Positions 38,079 to 64,000 of a stretch of 64,000 nt of DNA are shown piece by piece. Both the position numbers and the translations under genes were made by a program. Under the pieces are notes generated by a model. It saw only the letters and a list, made by a program, of their open reading frames with translations. It had not been told where the DNA came from and searched no databases. Within the stretch, counting starts at the first letter, position 1, and every line of letters starts with the position of its first letter. The stretch spans positions 62,001 to 126,000 of IMG/VR virus record IMGVR_UViG_3300027759_006101; one strand, 5' to 3'.

Positions 38079-38875
38079 CTTATATGCGGCAATCTAATTG
38101 ACAAACAATTGGTGACTAAAGAATTCCATCCAGAGCCAGAACTAATATTTGAAGTGCTTCCTAATACCATTAAAAAAATGGGTTTGCCAGAATTGAGTCT
38201 TGATTTGGCAAGTCTGTCCAAATTTTGAACAAAGTGAGGATGCGTGTAGCTATATTGTTCGATGCCATCTATAACAATAAAATCTAAGTTTTTGAATTCA
38301 TCATTGATAATTTCAAATTGTTCTTTTTTATCAAAGTCAGTAATGATGCTTATAAGGTCTGACCACTCGTAATATTTAGCAGTAAGATTTTTTCTAATTG
38401 CAGCCTGGACTAAGACAGAAGCAATAAATGTTTTTCCACTGCCACTTTTTCCATCAAAAAGTATAGAATGCAGCTTTGAAACAAGATTGCCAGAGTGTCT
38501 AATTTTGGGACATTCGTTATCTGCAATTAACTGCAATTTCTTTTCGTAAAACTTAAGAATTGTAAAAACTCTTTCACTTACTTGTTCTTCAGCTCCCAAA
38601 TCTTTACCAGCAGAATCAGTTCTCGTGTTCCAATCATCTAAAGTTTTGCCTATGTATAGCAATGGAACATTAGATTTACGATAGACGCTTTTGTAAAATC
38701 TTTCTTTTTCACAAGAACATAATACAGCTTTATCATTCTCAGATTTTGTATATCCTGTGTAGTTACAAAGAACGCAGCCTTTGCCTTCACTCATACGACG
38801 TAGTTTGTCTTTTTCGTTTAAGTTTTTAGTTGTGCGTTCTAAACCAAGTATTTCATCAAATGACACATCAGACAC
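38075..38875 (-). CDS. dnaC: DnaC/DnaI-like helicase loader ATPase
   Basis: N-terminal C..C...G....CSC zinc motif, GKSGSGKTF, FIVIDGI. Adjacent to dnaB. Confidence 0.7.
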   Translation of the reverse strand: MSDVSFDEILGLERTTKNLNEKDKLRRMSEGKGCVLCNYTGYTKSENDKAVLCSCEKERFYKSVYRKSNVPLLYIGKTLDDWNTRTDSAGKDLGAEEQVSERVFTILKFYEKKLQLIADNECPKIRHSGNLVSKLHSILFDGKSGSGKTFIASVLVQAAIRKNLTAKYYEWSDLISIITDFDKKEQFEIINDEFKNLDFIVIDGIEQYSYTHPHFVQNLDRLAKSRLNSGKPIFLMVLGSTSNISSGSGWNSLVTNCLSIRLPHIR

Positions 38876-40479
38876 TATAAATCATCCTCATCATTATTAT
38901 ATCTTCTTAAATCAGAATTACCATTACTAGCATTTCTAGCTCTTTCAGAAGCCCAAGCTCTCAGCAATTCAATTTCTTCTTTCATAAGTTTGGATATAGG
39001 TACAGATTCTTTCAAGGACTGAAGTATATCATAGGTTGTAATGTCTCTTTTATTATCACTAAAAGCTTCATACAATGCACTTTCTATAGCAGCTTCGATT
39101 TCAGCTCCAGTGTATGATTCGGATACATCTGACAATTTATCTAAGTCATAATGTTTTGGATTTCTAGCTCTTTTTTGAAGATGTATTTCAAAAATTATTC
39201 TTCTCTCAGAAAACTTAGGCAAATCAACAAAAAATATTTCATCAAATCTGCCTTTTCTTAAGAGCTCTGGAGGAAGTGTTGTTACATCATTGGCAGTAGC
39301 AACAACAAATACAGGCTCTTTTCTGTCTTGCATCCAAGTAAGCCAAGAGCCTAAAACTCTACTAGTAGTTCCGCCATCAGTTGAAGAAGATGCTCTACTT
39401 CCTGACATACCTTTATCAATTTCATCGCACCACAATATGCAGGGAGCAACACTTTCGGCAACCTTAAACACCTGACGCATATTTTGTTCAGAGCTTCCTA
39501 CAAGCCCTGAAAAAACTTTGCCCATATCCAGTCTTAGCAATGGGAAATTCCAAAATGAAGAAATTCCCTTAGCAAATAGAGACTTTCCAGCTCCTTGAAT
39601 TCCTACAAGTAAAATGCCCTTAGGATTACTAGGTAAGCCATATTCGACTGCTTCTCTTGAAAAAGCATCTTTACGCTTACTTAACCATATTTTCAAGCCT
39701 TCAAGACCACCAATACTATCCATATTGATACTCTCATCAATCCAGTCTAGAAGACCTGATTTCTTGATGATGTCTCTTTTTTGTTGAGATATAGTTTCAG
39801 GCAATAGAGAGGAATGCTTAATCATACAATATGTGCAAACTTGTTCACACTCAGACAAAGTAAGACCACGAAATGAATTTATAATATTGTCCTTCTCTTC
39901 ATTACTATAAGTTGTTTTGAATTTAGCAGACAAATCAGCTCGTTTACTTGCTCTTTCAAGCAAATTATTGATTTTTGTATTTATCTCAAACTTGGTTGGC
40001 AATGGGAAATCAATTAATGGCACAATCTTTTCAAGGTCATTAGGTAATTCTAAGACTGACGAAAGAATAATGATTGCTTTATTTTGGACAGTGAATTCAT
40101 TCGTAAGATTTTTGAGATGTCTTATGATTTTAATTTCTACTTGTCCCTTATAATTTCCAGACCCAAAAAATTTATTAAAGTCTTTAAGAACTAAAATACA
40201 AAATTTGTTTTTAGGAACAATTAAGTTTTGAAACCAAGAAAGAACTTCAGATTGGTCTAATTGTTTTTCAACTTCTTTTGTAGGCAAAAATTCAGGAAAA
40301 GTAGATTCTAATCCTGAAACAACGTCCCACTTTATAAGATCCCACGAAGTATCAGCTTTAGAACACATTTGCTCTAAAGCTGACAATACTCTGTTTTCCT
40401 CTTGAGAAACGATATAAATAACGGTTCTTTTGGACCTTACAAGAAGTTCAATTTCTTCTAACGTACTTATGCTATCCAT
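38875..40479 (-). CDS. Ycf46-like AAA+ ATPase
   Basis: IGGLEGLK.WL, GILLVGIQGAGKS, PLLRLDMG, LVGSSE, WCDEIDK, ATAN...LPPELLRKGRFDE. Confidence 0.85.
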   Translation of the reverse strand: MDSISTLEEIELLVRSKRTVIYIVSQEENRVLSALEQMCSKADTSWDLIKWDVVSGLESTFPEFLPTKEVEKQLDQSEVLSWFQNLIVPKNKFCILVLKDFNKFFGSGNYKGQVEIKIIRHLKNLTNEFTVQNKAIIILSSVLELPNDLEKIVPLIDFPLPTKFEINTKINNLLERASKRADLSAKFKTTYSNEEKDNIINSFRGLTLSECEQVCTYCMIKHSSLLPETISQQKRDIIKKSGLLDWIDESINMDSIGGLEGLKIWLSKRKDAFSREAVEYGLPSNPKGILLVGIQGAGKSLFAKGISSFWNFPLLRLDMGKVFSGLVGSSEQNMRQVFKVAESVAPCILWCDEIDKGMSGSRASSSTDGGTTSRVLGSWLTWMQDRKEPVFVVATANDVTTLPPELLRKGRFDEIFFVDLPKFSERRIIFEIHLQKRARNPKHYDLDKLSDVSESYTGAEIEAAIESALYEAFSDNKRDITTYDILQSLKESVPISKLMKEEIELLRAWASERARNASNGNSDLRRYNNDEDDL

Positions 40480-41296
40480 TTAGGAACATTTCAATTTTAA
40501 ATCTTGGTTGTCCTGGGTAATCATCAGAGCGCCACCAAATTTCATTCTTAAATTTTGCTATATCTTGTTGAAATAAATTGCGCCAATCAAGAAGTTTGAA
40601 ATCTGAAGGGTAAGGTGAACGTGAAATAGATTTTTGGATAATGTCACTGAGTAGTTTTTTCTCTTGTGCGTTTCCCTTAGACATTTGAATAAATAAATTC
40701 TTCAATCCATTAGTTAAGTCTTGATCGTTAACTTTTTTGTATTTAGCATAATATGTGCTTGCTATTGGAATGCCATACTTGCTAAATAATTCCTTAGACT
40801 TACCCTCGGATGCTAATAGATGAACTTCTGGGAAAATATCTATAAGTGAAACAGAAGAATTTGACTTGATGACATCTTGAAAAAATCTATTTAAAAGATT
40901 AGGAAATTCAGCAAGTAAAAAATGGCCTGCTCTTTGCAAAACAATATTTTTATTTAAGAAACACCAATCAATAAATTTCTTGGTCCACTCATTCTTATCA
41001 AGATTATTTTCGGCCATAAAGTCCATAATGATATTGATTATTTTGTTGTCAGAAGTGTAAGTAATTTTGTATGCACCATCAAAAACTCTTTTATATTCTT
41101 GAGCAAAATAATCAGAGAAATGCTTAGGTGTCCAAAGTGCAACATCTTCTGGAATGTCTTTTGTTTTTACGGGTACAGTCTTTTTTCTTTGCCTTTTGTT
41201 AGCATTGAAAGGATTTGACAATTCACTTTGAAGAGGAACGTGTTGCATATAAATCGCCTTTACAAACTCAAATGTCGGATCGCTAACTGGTTTCAA
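40472..41296 (-). CDS. Hypothetical protein in the replication cluster
   Basis: 274-aa ORF overlapping both neighbours. Confidence 0.55.
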   Translation of the reverse strand: MKPVSDPTFEFVKAIYMQHVPLQSELSNPFNANKRQRKKTVPVKTKDIPEDVALWTPKHFSDYFAQEYKRVFDGAYKITYTSDNKIINIIMDFMAENNLDKNEWTKKFIDWCFLNKNIVLQRAGHFLLAEFPNLLNRFFQDVIKSNSSVSLIDIFPEVHLLASEGKSKELFSKYGIPIASTYYAKYKKVNDQDLTNGLKNLFIQMSKGNAQEKKLLSDIIQKSISRSPYPSDFKLLDWRNLFQQDIAKFKNEIWWRSDDYPGQPRFKIEMFLNG

Positions 41297-42018
41297 GGTA
41301 TACCCACCGTTTCATCTTCAAGCCCAAAATTTTGCATTTCTAAAATTTCTTCATGAGAAACTGATTTAATTTTTGCTATTCCATCTTCTTTGAAAGTCAA
41401 ATAGTTGACACTTGAAATCAATGAAAATTTGTCCGCAGAGTGTGATATCAATATAACTTGCAAATCCAATTCATCTATGTATGATTTCAAAAAAGCAAGC
41501 ATATTTGCCATTACAACATCTTTTGAAACAGCTGCTAAAGCTTCATCAAATATATAAATGCCTTTGTAGTCATTGTAAGTACCAAAAGCTATACGCAAAA
41601 GTACACTAATAATTTCCTGAAGACCACCACCATTAGAGCCCTTAATAGGTCTCATTACTCTTTTGCCATTGATGGTTTTTTCAATACAAGGCAAGATTGA
41701 AAATTGGCCAGAAAAGTCATCATCTTTAGAGTGAATTTCTTTTATCTCAAAAGAAAAGACATAATCATCACCATAAATTTTTTGGATAGCGCTTGTTAAT
41801 ATCTCTTCAATTGATGCAAGAGCTTTGAGACGAGTATCAGAAGCTCTTTGCCTTAAGAAAATTTGAGCTTTTTTTGTATTGCCCTTTTTATTCTCAAGAT
41901 TTTTTAAGTTATTTTCTTGCTCAGTTAATATGTTCTGTAAAGTATTACGTTCCGATTCCTGACCAATCAAATGTCTTTCAATCTTATTAATTTCTTTTTT
42001 TATTTCAGAAAATTCCAA
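41293..42018 (-). CDS. sbcC: SbcC/Rad50 C-terminal half (coiled coil, signature, Walker B)
   Basis: GSNGGG signature, IFDEA Walker B, ILISH switch. Confidence 0.8.
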   Translation of the reverse strand: MEFSEIKKEINKIERHLIGQESERNTLQNILTEQENNLKNLENKKGNTKKAQIFLRQRASDTRLKALASIEEILTSAIQKIYGDDYVFSFEIKEIHSKDDDFSGQFSILPCIEKTINGKRVMRPIKGSNGGGLQEIISVLLRIAFGTYNDYKGIYIFDEALAAVSKDVVMANMLAFLKSYIDELDLQVILISHSADKFSLISSVNYLTFKEDGIAKIKSVSHEEILEMQNFGLEDETVGIP

Positions 42019-42019
42019 G

Positions 42020-42274
42020 CTAATCTCCTTGCAATTCTTCTAATTTAACTTCTATTTCTGATAATTTAGATTCTAAGTCAGTTTGCTTTCTGACAATAAG
42101 AGACTTTAATTCTTTTGGCTGGCAGTTATAATCAGTTTCACATTTTTGCACCAATTTATCGTGCTCAATCTTATACTTATTCAATTGCTCAGTAAGCAAT
42201 TGAACTCTTCCCTCAGCAGCTGATTTTTTTGATTTAAGTGCTTCAATTTGATCTAAAATTTCTTGTGCCGTCAT
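42020..42274 (-). CDS. Small coiled-coil protein
   Basis: 84-aa heptad pattern, between sbcD and the sbcC C-half. Confidence 0.6.
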   Translation of the reverse strand: MTAQEILDQIEALKSKKSAAEGRVQLLTEQLNKYKIEHDKLVQKCETDYNCQPKELKSLIVRKQTDLESKLSEIEVKLEELQGD

Positions 42275-43257
42275 TGTGTATTTACCTTTCTGACTGCTTC
42301 AACTGCTATTTCTGCAATATCATCAGAAACATCAGCTTTTTTAGCCATATCCTTAAGAGCCACCAGTTTATCATCAAGAGAAGTAAATTGCCAAGAGTGA
42401 GTTCTCATACTAGCAACTTTGAACTTAAATTCTTGAGTGTCTGATTTTTGTTCTTTAGCGATTTGAATTTCTTCCAATTTAAATACCTGATCGTAAGGCA
42501 ATGCAGATTTGAGTTTATAATATTCTTCGGAAATAATATCCCCATCCAAAGAATATTCTAATAATAATATTTGAATGTCTTTTTTCAAATTATCTTTAGA
42601 GGCTGAATATCTACTAATTGCACCAGGATTTATGAAGCGTTTTCCGTCACTTCTAACTTGCTCCATTGCGTGATGTATGTGACCTGAAATAACTAAGTTA
42701 GTATTTGGATGTAATGGAGTATTTTCAAATAAGAAAGTAAATTCTTCAAATCTATCTAAAGCTGTTGATATAGAAGCATGACAAACCCATATGATAGCCG
42801 AGGATGATGTCAAATAGCCCTCTTTTATATCCTTATCTAAGCTTGCGGTGTAATGAGCAAAAGATATACCTAGAGATGGTTCATAGCCTGTTTTGATTAG
42901 ATATCCAGCGTTTATTAGAGTACCTAAAGTTGTTTTTTCTAAATTACAAGAACTATCTAAATCGTGATTGCCTACACACACATAAATTGGAAATGACCAA
43001 GAGATATTTCCATTAGGCACACCCTTGAGAATGTCTAATGTTTGATTGCGTAATAATGGACCTACTTCATATGATTCGAATAAATCCCCGAGCAAAACAA
43101 CAGCATCAAGTTTTCGTTCTTCAGCTAACAATAAACACTCAGTCAGCTTTTTTTTGATTGCTTCACAATAATTATCAAGTCTGTTTTTTGGCTGTCTATC
43201 TGATAAATGAATATCGCCAATAAACATAACTCTCTTTGTTTTTATTTCGTTTTTCAT
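42271..43257 (-). CDS. sbcD: SbcD/Mre11 metallophosphoesterase nuclease
   Basis: GDIHL, LGDLF, VGNHD, SGHIH, NPG. Start at 43257 forms an ATGA overlap. Confidence 0.88.
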   Translation of the reverse strand: MKNEIKTKRVMFIGDIHLSDRQPKNRLDNYCEAIKKKLTECLLLAEERKLDAVVLLGDLFESYEVGPLLRNQTLDILKGVPNGNISWSFPIYVCVGNHDLDSSCNLEKTTLGTLINAGYLIKTGYEPSLGISFAHYTASLDKDIKEGYLTSSSAIIWVCHASISTALDRFEEFTFLFENTPLHPNTNLVISGHIHHAMEQVRSDGKRFINPGAISRYSASKDNLKKDIQILLLEYSLDGDIISEEYYKLKSALPYDQVFKLEEIQIAKEQKSDTQEFKFKVASMRTHSWQFTSLDDKLVALKDMAKKADVSDDIAEIAVEAVRKVNTQ

Positions 43258-44381
43258 ACAGGTTTTCCACAAGTATCACATAAGTCAAAATTTTCAGAAA
43301 GATATTTTTTCAAACGCTCAATCTCTTTGTTGCTTTCTAAAATAATTTTGTTTTCATCAGACGTGTTTTTTTCAGTTTCGCTAATACTATCAGATACTTC
43401 TTGCAAACATTCTTTAAGTTCATTAGCTAGAGTGTATTCTAATTGAAGTTTCACAGATTCTGAAATTAAGTTACCAATGGTTCCTTCAGAAATTTCAAAA
43501 TATTTTTCGTATTGCTTTTTGGACTTGAAAAAATTATCTCTTGCTTTAGAAATTTCTTCAATCATTTTCAATCCATCTTCTATATCACTGAATGAGTCTT
43601 CCAAAAGTGGTATAGATTCTGAGAAAAAATTAATTAGTACGCTCGTATGATTTATTTCATTTTTGCAGTCTCTAACTCTATTGATTAAGGTTGCAATATC
43701 ATTGAAAAAAGATTTGGCATCGTGTATGTATGTTTCACAATCTTGATATTTATTTATCAAATCATTTAGTTTTTCTAAACTTTCTAGCTTTTCATCAAGT
43801 CCTTCAAAAGGTTCTAATTTCTTTTTTGTATTTTCGATTTCAGTATTTGCTCTTTTAATATCACCAGAAATTTTATTTATATCAGAACCTAAATTTGATG
43901 CAGCTTCTTCTAAATCGTGAATGCCTAATAATCTGGAAATTTCCTTTGGTAGAGCTTCGTCGCTTAGATTGATAAGGAAAAGTTTATCTTCTTGATTGGC
44001 AAAAGAAAGAGCGCCAGTTGAAGTTTTAGGAATGTGACCGAGAAAGTCTAATGCTTCTTGTGGAAATTGTTTAGAGAATCTTGAATGTTTTTGTAATTCT
44101 TTACCAGCATATTGGAATTCAAGCTCATTAGTATCGCCCTTGATTCTTTTGTAGTAATCACCATTTTTAAAATTTATAGTGATTTGAGCGTTCTTTTGTC
44201 CATCTCTTACATCTTGTTTTCTAAAGATATCAAGAAATGCTGTTGAGAGGGATCTGAATAATCCAGATTTGCCACTATCGGAGCTTCCTGTTATCAAATT
44301 CAAACCTGGATATAGTTTGATGTGAGTATCTTGGTGATTTTGAAAATCCTGTATGCGTATTGATTCTATATGCCTATTCAT
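43254..44381 (-). CDS. sbcC: SbcC/Rad50 N-terminal half ending in a zinc hook
   Basis: IQDFQNH, NLITGSSDSGKS Walker A, FANQ Q-loop, coiled coil, terminal CDTCGKPV. Confidence 0.82.
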   Translation of the reverse strand: MNRHIESIRIQDFQNHQDTHIKLYPGLNLITGSSDSGKSGLFRSLSTAFLDIFRKQDVRDGQKNAQITINFKNGDYYKRIKGDTNELEFQYAGKELQKHSRFSKQFPQEALDFLGHIPKTSTGALSFANQEDKLFLINLSDEALPKEISRLLGIHDLEEAASNLGSDINKISGDIKRANTEIENTKKKLEPFEGLDEKLESLEKLNDLINKYQDCETYIHDAKSFFNDIATLINRVRDCKNEINHTSVLINFFSESIPLLEDSFSDIEDGLKMIEEISKARDNFFKSKKQYEKYFEISEGTIGNLISESVKLQLEYTLANELKECLQEVSDSISETEKNTSDENKIILESNKEIERLKKYLSENFDLCDTCGKPV

Positions 44382-60258: not shown

Positions 60259-60480
60259 TTAATCTTTTACAGGAGTAATATGAATGCACTGAGCTTCTTC
60301 TTTCCTCAATGCAATGTGACTTTCTCTACAGTTTACAACCATCATATCTGTGTGTTGTTTGTTCAAAATTTTAATCTCACAGCCAGGATTGAAACCTAAT
60401 TCAGAAAGTCTTAATCTGACAGTTCCGCAAATTGATTCAATCCTATAAGTTTCACCAGCAGAACCATCAAATAATGTCAT
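60259..60480 (-). CDS. feoA: FeoA-domain protein
   Basis: L....GE..RI..I....RLRLSELGFNPG.EI.IL......VV......IALRKEEA..I.I. Confidence 0.8.
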   Translation of the reverse strand: MTLFDGSAGETYRIESICGTVRLRLSELGFNPGCEIKILNKQHTDMMVVNCRESHIALRKEEAQCIHITPVKD

Positions 60481-60481
60481 C

Positions 60482-60937
60482 TCACCACCACAATTCAAAC
60501 CAAAGTTTAGAAAGATATTCTACCGCTAACTTCACATCATCAGTAAGTTTTTTTCTTTCTTCAATATCTACTGAATTGAAATATTTATCAGAAACATAAT
60601 AATTTTCAAAAGCTTGAATGATAAATCTCAATTTTTCATCATAAGATTCTTCAGTCTCGCCAATAGGAATACCATTATTTACTTCAATAAATCTTTTTAA
60701 TCTAGGAATTATGAATAATGCCATAGTGCGATCCATATGCCAAGTTTCAGTGTCGTCAAATCCTCTTTCAAATCTTTGTTGACGATACTGCTCTTTTTTC
60801 ACAAGATCTTTTTCATAAACATCATCAGATACACTAAAACAAATATTATTTAGTCCCTCTGGCTTTATAGATAATTGCAAGTAGTCTTTTGATTTCTTCT
60901 GGGTCGATTTTGATTCTTTTTGGCTCATCTTTATCAC
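60482..60937 (-). CDS. Conserved phage hypothetical protein
   Basis: QRFERGFDDTETW..D.T.A.FI.PRLKRF pattern, recognised from phage proteins. Confidence 0.55.
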   Translation of the reverse strand: MIKMSQKESKSTQKKSKDYLQLSIKPEGLNNICFSVSDDVYEKDLVKKEQYRQQRFERGFDDTETWHMDRTMALFIIPRLKRFIEVNNGIPIGETEESYDEKLRFIIQAFENYYVSDKYFNSVDIEERKKLTDDVKLAVEYLSKLWFELWW

Positions 60938-60989: not shown

Positions 60990-61230
60990 ATTTACTGAAT
61001 TCTTGAAAATATGGACAAGTTTGAAATCCAGCACCATCTCTCACCCAGCCATTGCCTTTACACTTTTCTTTACCTTTTCCCAAGCACTCACAAACTCCAA
61101 TAGGCTTGCCATTTCTGATAATCATATAATCAATTTTAGCTTGCTCTTCTGGCGTAAGGTCAAGAAATTCAGCAATTGATCCAACACGAAATCCAGCTTC
61201 TTCTAAATGCTTCTTCTTATCATCAGTCAT
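60988..61230 (-). CDS. Small protein: XRE/antitoxin-like N-terminal peptide plus Cys-rich C-terminus
   Basis: KKKHLEEAGFRVGSIAEFLDLTPEE, then CEC......C......CP. Confidence 0.45.
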   Translation of the reverse strand: MTDDKKKHLEEAGFRVGSIAEFLDLTPEEQAKIDYMIIRNGKPIGVCECLGKGKEKCKGNGWVRDGAGFQTCPYFQEFSK

Positions 61231-61642
61231 CAATATCTTCTTCTTCATCCTCTAGTTCATCTGCCATCAAAACAGCAGATAAATCTTCAGGGACATTATC
61301 TACAGTATAGCCTTTTTCATCAATTGATTCTGTATCATAAGAGTCTAATTGATCAAGCCAATCTCGATAATCATCATAAGTGTCATCAAATGCTTCTTGT
61401 AAAGTATCAAAATCGAGTGTGTATTCTTTTTTGTAGAACTTCATTGCTTTATCAAAAATTCCACAGTCTGAATCAATCTCAAGATAAGCATAACCATCTT
61501 CATTAAGTGGTTCTTTGCCATTGCCTAAATAAGAATATTCTGAAATTGCATCAAAAATATTCAAACTATCAAGTAAATCTAAACTTACTTTCCAGTAGTC
61601 ATGTCGATAACAGTCAATTGCTTGAACAATAATTTTTTCCAT
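61223..61642 (-). CDS. Acidic hypothetical protein
   Basis: 139-aa ORF containing YLEIDSDC. Confidence 0.5.
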   Translation of the reverse strand: MEKIIVQAIDCYRHDYWKVSLDLLDSLNIFDAISEYSYLGNGKEPLNEDGYAYLEIDSDCGIFDKAMKFYKKEYTLDFDTLQEAFDDTYDDYRDWLDQLDSYDTESIDEKGYTVDNVPEDLSAVLMADELEDEEEDIDD

Positions 61643-61648
61643 AATTAT

Positions 61649-61810
61649 TTATTTCCCTTTTTGGCTATTTTTAATGAGCTTGCTTATAATCTTAACTAGC
61701 AAGGCTATAATTACGCCAGGTATTGCAACTAAAACAACTAAAATAAAAGGTCCGAAAGGAATCAAAAGCATAGCAGCTGTGTTGAGAAAATCTTCATCAA
61801 ATGCATTCAT
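61649..61810 (-). CDS. 53-aa membrane peptide (not in the ORF track)
   Basis: AAGGAGG RBS, then MNAFDEDFLNTAAMLLIPFGPFILVVLVAIPGVIIALLVKIISKLIKNSQKGK*. Confidence 0.6.
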   Translation of the reverse strand: MNAFDEDFLNTAAMLLIPFGPFILVVLVAIPGVIIALLVKIISKLIKNSQKGK

Positions 61811-61812
61811 AA

Positions 61813-62055
61813 TTATTCCTCCTTATCTTCTTCAGTATCCCAATAATCAATGTCCCAATCATCAGCAATTAGATCACTGGGGTATAAATCAAGAGTCAAA
61901 GACCATAATTCATACCTGCTTTCAATGTCATCCGGAAAACGTACAAGCACAAAACAAATTTCATCTTTGTCGTAATACATATATTTTTGTTCCCAGGAAG
62001 TTCTTGTGATTGGCTTGCCTTCCATTAAAGAATCTAATACTTCAGTGAATTTCAT
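61813..62055 (-). CDS. DUF2829/Tad2-like protein
   Basis: MKFTEVLDSLMEGKPITRTSW...DLIADDW. Confidence 0.65.
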   Translation of the reverse strand: MKFTEVLDSLMEGKPITRTSWEQKYMYYDKDEICFVLVRFPDDIESRYELWSLTLDLYPSDLIADDWDIDYWDTEEDKEE

Positions 62056-62266
62056 CTACTATCTCCCAATCATCTTCAAGAAAATCACCACTATCAAGAG
62101 CATCAAAAATACTAACATAGCTCTCAAATTTAGGATCATTTGGAACATATTCTGGGACTTCTTTGACATCAGAAAAATAAGCCCTGCACTTTATATCAGG
62201 CTCCCAAGATTTTCGCCTTAATGTAAAGCCATCTTCTAATTTATCTAATGCTTCTTTACCAGTCAT
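62042..62266 (-). CDS. DUF2829/Tad2-like protein
   Basis: MTGKEALDKLEDGFTLRRKSW...DFLEDDWEIV. Confidence 0.6.
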   Translation of the reverse strand: MTGKEALDKLEDGFTLRRKSWEPDIKCRAYFSDVKEVPEYVPNDPKFESYVSIFDALDSGDFLEDDWEIVDEIH

Positions 62267-62481
62267 TCTTCAATAACTTTCTTAAAAATATATTTTGCTT
62301 TCATTGGCAAAATAAGATATTGAACTGTAAGCCATTCTGTGACGCCTGATTTATGTTTTACTTTATTTTGAATTTCGTTATCTTTAACACGCCAAGCTGT
62401 AACGTTTGTACCGTCATCAATAGCTAAATAATATCCATCATTTAGTTTTTCAACAACATCAATAGGGATAGGTAGGCTCAT
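62263..62481 (-). CDS. Hypothetical protein, possibly a degenerate DUF2829-like copy
   Basis: DVVEKLNDG resembles the family N-terminus, but the C-terminal DW motif is missing. Confidence 0.4.
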   Translation of the reverse strand: MSLPIPIDVVEKLNDGYYLAIDDGTNVTAWRVKDNEIQNKVKHKSGVTEWLTVQYLILPMKAKYIFKKVIEE

Positions 62482-62737
62482 TTTGTTTCCTGAAAGTTTC
62501 TCTTACATTTTTATCCCAAAGTAATTCAGACGCAAAACCAATAGTACCAGAATCAAAATGAACCCAGACAGTTTTACCATCATCAGATAGACTTACTTCA
62601 ATAATATCATCTTTATCGTATTGAAATTCTTCACAAAAAATAGATGCTATTTCGTGTAAATATTTTCTGAATCTGACAAAACTATAGATACGACCCTTAA
62701 CATATTCTTCACTATAAATTCTTTGATCAGTTTGCAT
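62459..62737 (-). CDS. Hypothetical protein
   Basis: 92-aa ORF in a coupled gene run. Confidence 0.5.
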   Translation of the reverse strand: MQTDQRIYSEEYVKGRIYSFVRFRKYLHEIASIFCEEFQYDKDDIIEVSLSDDGKTVWVHFDSGTIGFASELLWDKNVRETFRKQNEPTYPY

Positions 62738-62915
62738 AAGTGTACCTAACCAGTAAACTAACGATAAATAATAACAAAGATATAATAATTAAGAGCTTAG
62801 TATTCATTTCAATAAAAGATTTGTCTTTTTCGAAAATAATTTTCCACACTCCAGCCATAAAGTAACCAACTAAAATAAAACATATAAAAGATAATGCTAA
62901 TAAAAGAATAGTCAT
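62727..62915 (-). CDS. Small two-helix membrane protein
   Basis: Two hydrophobic stretches. First gene after the sigma70-type promoter. Confidence 0.55.
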   Translation of the reverse strand: MTILLLALSFICFILVGYFMAGVWKIIFEKDKSFIEMNTKLLIIISLLLFIVSLLVRYTYAN

Positions 62916-62918
62916 AAA

Positions 62919-62961
62919 AAAATCCCTATAAACAGTATACTGCCTATAAGGATTTTGTCAA
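62919..62961 (-). promoter_or_regulatory. Sigma70-type promoter overlapped by an imperfect palindrome
   Basis: Minus strand TTGACA (62961-56), N16, TATACT (62939-34). Palindrome AAAATCC.TATA..CAGTATACTG..TATA.GGATTTT at 62919-62956. Confidence 0.75.
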
Positions 62962-62972
62962 GAAAATATATT

Positions 62973-63161
62973 TTAGACAAGTTGCCAAGTGTCTACTTTT
63001 ACATCTTCATCATTTAGATTTTTCTGCACCCAATTTGAGTTGCTGTCAAATTTCTTCATAATCTTGTTATCTTCAAACTTTATATAAACAAAATCAGAAT
63101 TTACAGGTCTTTTTGCAACAGAGCCATTCTTCACAGAAACCCACACATCATAAAAAGTCAT
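62973..63161 (-). CDS. Divergent DUF2829/Tad2-like protein
   Basis: MTFYDVWVSVKNGSVAKRP...EDVKVDTWQLV. Confidence 0.5.
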   Translation of the reverse strand: MTFYDVWVSVKNGSVAKRPVNSDFVYIKFEDNKIMKKFDSNSNWVQKNLNDEDVKVDTWQLV

Positions 63162-63202
63162 TTGTATCCACCTCTATTAGTATATTTTCAGAACAACACC
63201 TA

Positions 63203-63970
63203 CTAACCTTTCCTGTGTTCTTCTTGTATTTTATTTACTTCAGCTACAACATCCACAACTTCCCAATCATCAGCAATTAAATCTAAATAAATAATTTTAC
63301 CATATCTAGAATATTTACCGACACCCCAATCAGGATGCCAACTTTTACGTCTAATTGTTTTTCCCGCATTTAAATCGTCCAAAACATCTTTGAATGATTT
63401 ACTCTGCACCACCACCCAATCCTCAGCAAAAAGATCTACTGTGGTTATTGTAGATTCAGCATGGTCATATTTTTTAGGAAATAATGTAAGACTAGGATTG
63501 CCTTCTCTTGACATCATTTTGCCGTGCTCCAACATTTTTACAGCCCAATTAATATCTCTTTTAAGTTCTATATTATTTGTCTTAAGAAAACTATCAAAGC
63601 TACTTCCTATATGTTTATTCTCAACAGCATAAGGTAAATAATCTTCACCTAGATCTAAAGTATATGGGAAATTAGTCTTATCCAACTTAGCAGCTTTCCA
63701 AGTTTTGTCTTTATTTTGATGATGTGTAAAGTCTTTAACTTCAGCACCCCATTGTTTGGTTTCATAATAATATTTGTATGTCTTACCATTTACATAAGCA
63801 AAACCATACATTTGCCAGTTTGTACCATTTGAACGAGGATCTTCTTCTGCTAATAAACCATGGTAAATGTAGCATTCATGTTTTTGCATCATATCCATAG
63901 CAGCTGGAGTGTTATATTCACAATTTTCAATATTGCAATCGTAAATTTTACTCACACCCTTGACATTCAT
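63203..63970 (-). CDS. Multi-domain protein with two tandem DUF2829/Tad2-like domains
   Basis: INWAVKMLEHGKMMSR...DLFAEDW (63404-63559) and SFKDVLDDLNAGKTIRRKSW...DLIADDW (63251-63403), preceded by KHIGSSFDSFL. Confidence 0.6.
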   Translation of the reverse strand: MNVKGVSKIYDCNIENCEYNTPAAMDMMQKHECYIYHGLLAEEDPRSNGTNWQMYGFAYVNGKTYKYYYETKQWGAEVKDFTHHQNKDKTWKAAKLDKTNFPYTLDLGEDYLPYAVENKHIGSSFDSFLKTNNIELKRDINWAVKMLEHGKMMSREGNPSLTLFPKKYDHAESTITTVDLFAEDWVVVQSKSFKDVLDDLNAGKTIRRKSWHPDWGVGKYSRYGKIIYLDLIADDWEVVDVVAEVNKIQEEHRKG

Positions 63971-64000
63971 ACTTTTACCTGTACGCTTCTCAAACTCACG

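What the first reader, a model, noticed from the sequence alone, without database searches (positions are those of the whole stretch)
61813..63970. Array of at least five DUF2829/Tad2-like domains, including a tandem fusion: candidate diversified immune-signal sponge arsenal
Seen: the [FG].[ED][AV]L..L..G....R..W ... D[LF].[AE][DE]DW frame occurs in 61813-62055, 62042-62266, twice in 63203-63970, and more divergently in 62973-63161, with a possible relic at 62263-62481. The middles are completely different. Known: Tad2 of phage SPO1 belongs to this family and sequesters Thoeris gcADPR, and homologs also bind CBASS cyclic dinucleotides. Inference: paralogs or hetero-oligomers with varied pockets could cover several, perhaps unknown, signalling molecules. 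The tandem fusion with an extra N-terminal domain is unusual.
Basis: partly seen in the sequence, partly recalled or inferred. Interest (0 to 1): 0.75.

Follow-up and report, generated by a model that had tools for sequence, protein, structure and literature searches.

The report
Array of short Tad2-like phage genes
A 358-kb freshwater jumbo phage carries a tightly packed, fast-changing operon with four certain and one probable copy of a shortened Tad2-like domain; they are good but untested candidates for proteins that soak up bacterial immune signals, and they lack the binding residues of the Tad2 proteins studied so far.

Summary
On the minus strand, 61813-62055, 62042-266 and two domains of the 281-aa protein 63203-64048 (which runs past the window end) are significant PF11195/Tad2-like domains. 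62973-63161 is a probable divergent fifth. The "relic" at 62263-62481 is not Tad2-like; it belongs to a separate conserved small-protein family. Two more copies lie elsewhere in the genome. Related freshwater phages carry 1-7 such genes in the same slot, about 13 paralogue types in 14 loci. An AlphaFold model of the tandem part (pLDDT 86) matches only solved Tad2 structures (Z 6-7), but just the ~50-residue core. The sponge interpretation is plausible and unproven. These are short-form domains: the gcADPR-pocket residues are largely missing (the second Trp in 0 of 55 lineage domains), and the fusion's domains lack the insertion that binds cyclic dinucleotides. Oligomer prediction gave no answer. 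The tandem fusion is not unusual: 63 of 149 top database clusters have two domains. Lactobacillus phage Semele has six tandem paralogues. The N-terminal extension is dispensable in relatives. Verdict: a new variant of a known kind, ligands unknown, moderate interest.

The parts
63203..64000 (-). Fusion gene, 281 aa. The true start is at 64048, 48 nt beyond the window end. It has a variable or dispensable N-terminal part (aa 1-~144) followed by two short Tad2-like domains.
   Evidence: ORF and homologue lengths. Pfam. dN/dS is 0.09-0.21. The tandem part is 85-95% identical in most orthologues (58% in L011), while the N-terminal part is 42-93% identical or absent.
63401..63559 (-). Tad2-like domain A of the fusion (aa 164-216). 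It has Gly in place of the W25-equivalent Trp.
   Evidence: HMM E 1e-16 and 2e-5. AF2 model pLDDT 86. VIA-align Z 6.7-6.8 to SptTad2 and SPO1 Tad2.
63248..63400 (-). Tad2-like domain B of the fusion (aa 217-267). This is a minimal 50-aa core carrying RRKSW ... DLIADDW.
   Evidence: HMM E 1e-19 and 2e-11. VIA-align Z 7.1 to SPO1 Tad2, with 50 residues at 1.8 A.
62973..63161 (-). 62-aa ORF: a probable, very divergent short Tad2-like protein. Among the 14 related loci it is present only in L011.
   Evidence: Genome-wide HMM E 0.04 with a full-length match, and hhalign 86% over the N-terminus. Atlas scores 0.90-0.91 to clusters that partly carry PF11195. dN/dS 0.33.
62916..62972 (.). The intergenic gap at the head of the overlapping gene run. 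It holds an 11/12 sigma-70-like promoter match (62961->62934, minus strand) overlapping a 30-nt palindrome.
   Evidence: This is a consensus match only; the number of promoter-like sites in the region is no higher than in shuffled sequence.
62727..62915 (-). 62-aa predicted membrane protein, first gene of the overlapping operon.
   Evidence: Hydrophobic sequence. Conserved position in relatives as cluster 12.
62459..62737 (-). 92-aa conserved protein of unknown function (family c3).
   Evidence: Present in 13 of 14 related loci at 61-86% identity. No Pfam hit. Not Tad2-like.
62263..62481 (-). 72-aa protein of a separate conserved multi-copy family (c2). It is not a Tad2 relic.
   Evidence: 12 distinct members, 1-3 per locus. 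hhalign to Tad2 profiles 5-16%. Atlas gives no Tad2 link. dN/dS 0.13-0.35.
62042..62266 (-). 74-aa single-domain short Tad2-like protein (ORF2, pI 4.2). Its start overlaps the upstream gene by 4 nt.
   Evidence: Pfam 24.2 bits. Lineage HMM 1e-26. Broad HMM 3e-14. dN/dS 0.14-0.56.
61813..62055 (-). 80-aa single-domain short Tad2-like protein (ORF1, pI 4.05). It overlaps ORF2 by 14 nt. The ORF2-ORF1 pair is conserved in most relatives.
   Evidence: Pfam 29 bits, above the cut-off of 25. PDB Tad2 matches over the full length. Lineage HMM 1e-23. Synteny. dN/dS 0.16-0.68.
61649..61810 (-). 53-aa predicted membrane protein directly downstream, with a strong AAGGAGG ribosome-binding site.
61223..61642 (-). 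139-aa very acidic protein (pI 4.05), a conserved neighbour that completes the small-gene run before the terminator-like hairpin at 60989-60962.
   Evidence: dN/dS 0.12-0.21. No family match.

Best explanation
The stretch is part of a hypervariable accessory operon of an uncultured freshwater jumbo phage. The operon encodes a family of short-form Tad2-like (Pfam PF11195) proteins: one conserved protein with two minimal domains in tandem, and a variable number of fast-evolving single-domain paralogues (two certain and one probable here, up to seven in relatives).

Shown:
- Family membership.
- The Tad2 core fold for the tandem part.
- Purifying selection on all copies.
- Copy-number turnover between related phages.
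- A conserved N-terminal helix/strand and C-terminal D-x-x-A-D-D-W helix around an indel-prone middle.

Inferred: like characterised Tad2 proteins, these assemble into small oligomers whose interfaces bind and sequester nucleotide-derived host immune signals. The tandem protein could act as a built-in dimer, so that two chains would equal a tetramer. The paralogues would cover different molecules.

The pocket residues of known Tad2 are not kept, and the fusion's domains lack the cyclic-dinucleotide-binding insertion. The ligands are therefore probably not bound in the known way and may be unknown molecules.
For: - Pfam and custom HMM hits.
- The lineage profile matches all solved Tad2 proteins end to end at E 1e-9 to 4e-5.
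- The AF2 model of aa 145-281 has pLDDT 85.9. Its 24 best PDB matches are all Tad2 entries, and VIA-align gives Z 6.1-7.1 against 3.1 for the next fold.
- The W25- and D79-equivalent residues and several invariant Arg/Lys are conserved.
- Arrays of 1-7 copies, about 13 paralogue types, sit in the same slot in 14 related loci, beside variable cargo.
- dN/dS is below 1 for every copy. The middle evolves about 3 times faster than the termini at non-synonymous sites.
- Six database clusters fuse a short-form domain to a canonical Tad2 domain. Sponge domains are known to be fused to each other (PMC12265669).
- The Tad2 family is known to have many specificities, and 19 of 84 tested sponges had no known target (10.1101/2025.08.24.671296).
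- Near-identical contigs occur in river and wetland metatranscriptome libraries.
Against: - The gcADPR-site residues are not kept. These are W25/N26/W73/S76/T78/D79 in SPO1, and W21/N22 and S90/T92/D93 in HgmTad2. The W73 equivalent is found in 0 of 55 lineage domains, and N26 is E, E or H in three of the four window domains. Domain A has Gly for W25 but keeps the Asn.
- Only about 50 of about 85 Tad2 residues are matched. The loops, strand beta4 and the insertion that line the known pockets are missing from the fusion's domains.
- All Tad2 homologues that were active in the published screen carry both Trp residues. The short Tad2_80 was inactive wherever it could be tested.
- The dimer prediction for the tandem part gave no answer.
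- No ligand, host or defence system is known for this phage.
- The RNA-library contigs could come from carried-over DNA.
Confidence: 0.5

Rival explanations
1. Same fold, different job. The short-form DUF2829 domain is a small protein- or nucleic-acid-binding module, for example an inhibitor of a host protein or another host-takeover factor. It is not a small-molecule sponge.
For: - The canonical ligand residues and pocket-forming loops are absent.
- The short, non-canonical homologues tested in the published screen (Tad2_69, 72, 80) showed no activity.
- ORF1 and ORF2 are strongly acidic, pI about 4.1.
- A DUF2829 protein was once reported as an anti-CRISPR.
Against: - The anti-CRISPR activity was not reproduced, and that protein is a sponge.
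- Every member of the family with a known function is a sponge.
- Short-form domains are fused to canonical Tad2 domains in 6 clusters.
- The W25- and D79-equivalent residues and conserved basic residues are kept.
Confidence: 0.25
2. One or two composite sponges rather than five separate ones. The conserved ORF2-ORF1 pair, like the tandem protein, forms a single hetero-oligomer with asymmetric pockets. The 'arsenal' is then smaller than the domain count suggests.
For: - ORF2-type and ORF1-type genes are adjacent in 8 of the 13 related loci that reach the slot, and they overlap by 14 nt here.
- Two-domain proteins are very common in the family.
- Domain A lacks the Trp that domain B keeps, which fits an obligate asymmetric pair.
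Against: - ORF1-type genes occur without ORF2-type genes in L016-L018.
- HMMs of the N- and C-domains of tandem proteins do not assign ORF2 and ORF1 to the two classes.
Confidence: 0.3
3. Chance motif matches in non-coding or decaying sequence.
For: The ORFs are very short (62-80 aa) and the genome is AT-rich, so spurious ORFs are common.
Against: - HMM E-values go down to 1e-26.
- Orthologues exist in many related contigs, with 318 database proteins for the fusion.
- dN/dS is 0.09-0.68.
- The genes form an overlapping, same-strand operon.
Confidence: 0.01

Closest known systems
SPO1 Tad2 (gp34.65; PDB 8SME/8SMF/8SMG), the founding Thoeris anti-defence 2 sponge
   Same: - Same Pfam family.
- Same core: an N-terminal helix, a strand ending in R-x-x-W, and a C-terminal D-x-L-A-E-D-W helix plus strand. 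Domain B superposes on 50 residues at 1.8 A, Z 7.1.
   Different: - SPO1 Tad2 is 89 aa, single-copy in its genome, and a homotetramer.
- It binds gcADPR with W25, N26, W73, S76, T78 and D79. The window's copies are 50-80 aa, keep only the W25 and D79 equivalents (domain A lacks even W25), and occur as 4-5 copies plus 2 elsewhere in the genome.
HgmTad2/AcrIIA7 and SptTad2 (PDB 8KBI-8KBM, 8WJD), dual gcADPR and cyclic-dinucleotide sponges
   Same: Same family and fold, Z 6.1-6.7. The variable middle of the window's copies corresponds to their beta2-beta5 insertion, which Li et al. describe as highly variable among distant homologues.
   Different: Their 35-41-residue insertion builds the cGG/cGAMP pocket. 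The fusion's domains have almost no insertion, and the middles of ORF1 and ORF2 are unrelated in sequence. The W21/N22 and S90/T92/D93 site is not conserved.
MoTad2 (ModTad2 in the PDB entries 9EIB/8V3E), Tad2_70 and Tad2_71: Tad2 homologues that bind His-ADPR, cUMP/cCMP or N7-cADPR
   Same: ModTad2 is the best sequence match among solved structures, at E 1e-9 to the lineage profile. These proteins show that the family has evolved many specificities, which is the basis of the 'arsenal' idea.
   Different: All are long-form proteins (87-97 aa) with the GWNGK and W-x-[PA]-S-x-[ST]-D motifs. None is a short-form or tandem protein, and none comes from a multi-copy array.
Sponge-sponge fusion proteins (Tad2-Acb4, Tad2-Sequestin; PMC12265669)
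   Same: A Tad2 domain is joined to another small domain in one chain. Fusion was used there as a guide to new sponge families.
   Different: Here the partner is a second Tad2-like domain plus an unassigned N-terminal region. No Acb4 (PF13876) or Sequestin (PF21825) is found anywhere in the genome.
Six-gene paralogue array of Lactobacillus phage Semele (MG765279, 113015-116093) and the four-gene array of phage Bacchae (MG765277); uncharacterised and annotated as hypothetical
   Same: Tandem, same-strand arrays of genes that each start with a short-form Tad2-like domain, HMM E 1e-10 to 1e-13.
   Different: These are cultured Herelleviridae of a Gram-positive host. Each paralogue carries a shared ~60-aa C-terminal domain that is absent from the window's genes. 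No function has been tested.

Membership tests
Tad2 / DUF2829 (Pfam PF11195) | Significant match to the family profile. | tested here: met
   ORF1 scores 29.0 bits against a cut-off of 25. ORF2 scores 24.2, and the fusion 24-25 (31.8 when summed in frame). The lineage profile hits ModTad2, HgmTad2, SPO1 Tad2 and SptTad2 end to end at E 1e-9 to 4e-5. ORF6 is only probable. 62263-62481 fails.
Tad2 / DUF2829 (Pfam PF11195) | Tad2 fold: helix alpha1 followed by an antiparallel sheet and a C-terminal short helix. | tested here: met
   Tested for the fusion's two domains only. The AF2 model has pLDDT 85.9. All 24 top Foldseek PDB matches are Tad2 entries. VIA-align gives Z 6.1-7.1 against 3.1 for the next fold, but only about 50 of about 85 residues are matched.
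Tad2 sponges (functional class) | Homotetramer (dimer of dimers) with ligand pockets at protomer interfaces. | tested here: inconclusive
   Complex prediction on two copies of the tandem part scored 0.01 and returned 'no answer', which is not evidence either way. ORF1 and ORF2 oligomers were not tested.
Tad2 sponges (functional class) | gcADPR pocket residues: SPO1 W25, N26, W73, S76, T78, D79, equivalent to HgmTad2 W21/N22 and S90/T92/D93. | tested here: not met
   The W25 equivalent is kept in ORF1, ORF2 and domain B, and is Gly in domain A. N26 is E, E or H, and Asn only in domain A. The W73 equivalent is absent from all 55 lineage domains and present in 16 of 204 related database domains. 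The S and T positions are not kept. The D79 equivalent is kept.
Tad2 sponges (functional class) | Cyclic-dinucleotide pocket built by a 35-41-residue insertion between beta2 and beta5. | tested here: not met
   The fusion's domains are 52-54 aa in total, with almost no insertion. ORF1 and ORF2 have ~35-aa middles with no sequence similarity to HgmTad2 or SptTad2. For those two the test is inconclusive.
Tad2 sponges (functional class) | Binds and sequesters an immune signal, and rescues phage from a signalling defence system. | not testable with these tools
   This needs biochemistry and phage assays. The only related published data are that short, non-canonical homologues (Tad2_69, 72, 80) showed no activity in the systems where they could be tested, out of seven.
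Phage accessory / counter-defence gene island | Gene content and copy number vary between closely related phages within a conserved backbone. | tested here: met
   The backbone is the 898-aa gene, the fusion, c3, then the acidic 139-aa, 86-aa and 148-aa genes. Within it there are 1-7 Tad2-like genes and variable cargo: HD, PNP_UDP_1, methyltransferases and a sugar dehydratase.

The most novel reading that the evidence does not exclude
Short-form Tad2-like domains are a large, unstudied branch of the sponge family. They work as two-domain units, either as tandem proteins or as adjacent gene pairs, and these units pair into pseudo-tetramers with asymmetric pockets. The variable arrays in this freshwater jumbo phage lineage, and in Lactobacillus Harbinvirus phages, would be multi-specific arsenals. 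At least some members would capture immune signalling molecules that have not yet been discovered.
Probability: 0.2. Interest if true: 0.8.

Novelty: new variant of a known kind. Interest (0 to 1): 0.55.

Why it matters
Sponge proteins have repeatedly led to the discovery of new immune signals: 3'cADPR through Tad1 and His-ADPR through MoTad2. About a quarter of tested sponge homologues have no known target.

A phage lineage that keeps five to eight divergent Tad2-like domains, none with the known pocket, is a compact set of candidates for new ligands. Each domain has a conserved frame around a fast-changing middle.

The work also shows three things that the papers I could search do not discuss:
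- Two-domain Tad2-like proteins are common in sequence databases.
- Paralogue arrays exist in cultured, tractable Lactobacillus phages.
- Canonical Tad2 is almost always single-copy, with 339 places in 328 GenBank phage records.

If the short forms are not sponges, automatic 'Thoeris anti-defense 2-like' annotation of such proteins would be misleading.

Tried and rejected
- The full-length fusion model from a 17-sequence orthologue alignment was unusable, with pLDDT 41. It was replaced by a model of aa 145-281 built on 58 diverse tandem homologues.
- Complex prediction on the tandem part as a dimer gave 'no answer'. The cap then prevented tests of ORF1 as a tetramer or of ORF1 with ORF2.
- The N-terminal 150 aa of the fusion could not be assigned. 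There was no Pfam or PHROG hit, and Atlas scores were about 0.6, which is noise.
- Megablast and tblastn against GenBank phages found nothing for the locus or the tandem part.
- tblastn with a database tandem protein found only three weak hits.
- The search for related loci with the diverse alignment failed because no conserved stretch was available.
- The 'relic' at 62263-62481 was rejected.
- The idea that ORF2 and ORF1 are a split tandem was tested with N-domain and C-domain HMMs and gave no discrimination.
- A crude pooled dN/dS for the variable middles stayed below 1 (0.20-0.47), so there is no evidence of positive selection.
- No Acb4 or Sequestin homologue was found in the genome.
- One literature search was too loose to be useful. 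A stricter search found no paper that discusses tandem or multi-copy Tad2.
- The promoter and terminator scan found no more sites than in shuffled sequence.
- The host was not identified.
Full report
**Where the window lies.** The window is bases 62001-126000 of a 358,269-bp IMG/VR virus record. CheckV estimates 89% completeness, GC is about 32%, and the record is linear. Near-identical DNA is found in many freshwater and lake metagenomes from 2017 to 2025. No GenBank phage matches the locus. The host is unknown.

**Anatomy.** From 64048 (48 nt beyond the window end) down to about 60960, the minus strand carries a run of small genes, most of them overlapping or abutting:
- a 281-aa protein (63203-64048)
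- a 62-aa ORF (62973-63161)
- a 57-nt gap with an 11/12 sigma-70-like promoter match and a palindrome
- then, with overlaps of 4 to 23 nt: a 62-aa membrane protein (62727-62915), a 92-aa protein (62459-62737), a 72-aa protein (62263-62481), a 74-aa protein (62042-62266) and an 80-aa protein (61813-62055)
- then, abutting with gaps of a few nt: a 53-aa membrane protein and a 139-aa very acidic protein, followed by an overlapping 86-aa protein and a terminator-like hairpin.

**Check of the observation.**
- Pfam PF11195 (Tad2-like) matches the 80-aa protein above the curated cut-off, 29 bits against 25. The 74-aa protein and the long protein fall just at or below it, or above it when the in-frame pieces are summed.
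- An HMM grown from the locus and its relatives finds four strong domains in this stretch: the two single-domain genes and aa 164-216 and 217-267 of the long protein. A second HMM, built only from 204 domains of unrelated database clusters, finds the same four. Both also find one more strong domain outside the window, listed under additional copies below.
- The 62-aa ORF is the next best of 3,682 six-frame segments, with E 0.04 over its full length. Its hhalign probability is 86% over the N-terminal part. Its protein-language-model neighbours score 0.90-0.91 and lie in clusters that partly carry PF11195. I count it as probable.
- The suspected relic at 62263-62481 is not related by any test. 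It belongs to its own conserved family, which occurs 1-3 times per related locus.
Homologues are 281-287 aa, with the first 26 residues conserved.
- Two additional copies lie outside the window, at genome 129659-129892 and 160401-160613.

**Relatives.**
- The fusion protein has 318 database relatives. Fourteen viral contigs carry the locus.
- Synteny is conserved for a backbone: the 898-aa lipoprotein-like gene, the fusion, the 92-aa gene, the acidic 139-aa gene and onward. The number of Tad2-like genes between them ranges from one to seven, falling into about 13 sequence types.
- The same slot also takes up an HD-domain protein, a PNP_UDP_1 protein, methyltransferases and a GDP-mannose dehydratase in different relatives.
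- Seven related loci have a fusion protein without the first ~100 residues.
- The tandem part is the most conserved piece. It is 85-95% identical in most orthologues (58% in L011), where the N-terminal part is 42-93% identical or missing, and dN/dS is 0.09-0.21.
- The single-domain genes are the fastest-evolving, with dN/dS up to 0.56-0.68. Their middles change about three times faster than their ends.
- All values stay below 1, so these are functional genes with no proof of positive selection.

**Fold.**
- A model of the whole fusion was useless, with pLDDT 41.
- A model of aa 145-281 built on 58 diverse two-domain homologues is good, with pLDDT 85.9 and pTM 0.68.
- Its 24 best PDB matches are all Tad2-family entries: SPO1 Tad2, ModTad2, HgmTad2/AcrIIA7 and SptTad2.
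- The second-look aligner gives Z 6.1-7.1 for ten such entries and 3.1 for the next fold.
- Domain B superposes on 50 residues at 1.8 A, and domain A on 54-62 residues at 2.7-3.7 A.
- Only the core is present: alpha1, beta1, a short connection, the C-terminal helix and the last strand.

**Function.**
- The literature confirms that Tad2 proteins are homotetrameric sponges. SPO1 Tad2 holds gcADPR between W25 and W73 of two protomers, with N26, S76, T78 and D79.
- HgmTad2 needs W21/N22 and S90/T92/D93, and binds cyclic dinucleotides in a 35-41-residue insertion.
- Other homologues bind His-ADPR, N7-cADPR or cUMP/cCMP.
- In the window, the first Trp is kept in three of four domains and the Asp in all four.
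- The second Trp is absent from all 55 distinct domains of the lineage, and the Asn/Ser/Thr positions are mostly changed.
- In the published screen, every active Tad2 homologue has both Trp residues. The short Tad2_80, which resembles the window's copies, was inactive wherever it could be tested.
- The dimer prediction for the tandem part gave no answer.
- The sponge mechanism is therefore an inference from homology and genomic behaviour, not from conserved binding sites.

**How unusual it is.**
- A profile search of 1.84 billion representatives finds 2,863 relatives. Of the 149 best clusters, 63 have two complete domains. Six of these join a short-form domain to a canonical one. The tandem architecture is common.
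- Canonical Tad2 is nearly always single-copy in GenBank phages, with 339 places in 328 records. SPO1 and Vibrio phage nt-1 have one copy each.
- Lactobacillus phage Semele has six tandem paralogues and Bacchae four. Each has a short-form Tad2-like N-domain, and all are annotated as hypothetical.
- I found no paper that discusses such arrays or tandem Tad2 proteins.

**Expression.** Contigs with 0-1 mismatches from river and wetland metatranscriptome libraries cover parts of 61598-61987, 62205-62355, 62655-62805 and 63188-63365. DNA carry-over is not excluded.

**Verdict.**
- The family assignment is secure.
- The 'arsenal of sponges' reading is reasonable (about 0.5) but rests on homology. 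The known pockets are not conserved, so the ligands cannot be named.
- The finding is a new variant of a known kind and a useful candidate set for ligand discovery.

Noticed in passing
window 60259-60498 (-): A 79-aa phage protein with a full-length FeoA domain (Pfam 59.9 bits against a cut-off of 23). It is conserved in relatives at 36-95% identity.
   Followed up: no
window 62263-62481 (-); also L008:8802-9071, L010:7511-7741, L010:9421-9651 and others: A separate small-protein family (c2, 70-89 aa). It has 12 distinct members in 14 loci and 1-3 copies per locus, interleaved with the Tad2-like genes. It has no Pfam family, and dN/dS is 0.13-0.35. By position it could be another counter-defence family.
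   Followed up: partly
window 61223-61642 (-): A 139-aa very acidic protein (pI 4.05, with a C-terminal run of D/E), conserved next to the array with dN/dS 0.12-0.21. Its composition resembles that of DNA-mimic anti-restriction proteins, but it matches no family.
   Followed up: no
window 62912-62963: A 30-nt palindrome overlapping the best sigma-70-like promoter match (TTGACA-16-TATACT), in the intergenic gap at the head of the overlapping gene run. It may be an operator.
   Followed up: no
window 61828-62054 and 61877-61948: In lake DNA run X7, low-depth contigs join 62054 back to 61828 (a step back of 227 nt, about one gene unit) and skip 61877-61948. These may be copy-number or indel variants of the ORF2/ORF1 pair. 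The reads were laid at 85% likeness, so repeats or relatives could explain them.
   Followed up: no
L017:8123-8713, L022:4033-4578, L009:9059-10186, L021:6517-7482: Related phages carry other cargo in the same slot: an HD-domain phosphohydrolase (197 aa), a PNP_UDP_1 nucleoside-phosphorylase-like protein (182 aa, 38.8 bits), methyltransferases and a GDP-mannose 4,6-dehydratase. The first two could act on nucleotides.
   Followed up: no
L031 (Lactobacillus phage Semele MG765279, record 113015-116093); Bacchae MG765277, record 115051-116858: Six (Semele) and four (Bacchae) tandem paralogues of 117-131 aa. Each is a short-form Tad2-like N-domain plus a shared ~60-aa C-domain, and all are annotated as hypothetical proteins.
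   Followed up: partly
P0132, P0161, P0182, P0208, P0240, P0245 (database representatives): Two-domain proteins whose first domain is short-form and non-canonical and whose second domain is a canonical Tad2 with the W-x-x-S-x-[ST]-D motif. Five of the six second domains also carry GWN.
   Followed up: partly
L010:8708-9418: A 237-aa protein in a relative's array, with an N-terminal Tad2-like domain (aa 1-93) and about 140 further residues without any family match.
   Followed up: no
window 38875-44381 (-): An SbcCD-like pair (Metallophos 42271-43272 and AAA_23 43254-44381) and an AAA+ ATPase with lid domain (38875-40479).
   Followed up: no
genome 126122-128818 (window-equivalent 64122-66818, outside the window): An 898-aa protein with a lipoprotein-like signal sequence (…FISC) lies directly upstream of the fusion gene. 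It is conserved in relatives at 74-86% identity and was not scanned against family libraries.
   Followed up: no
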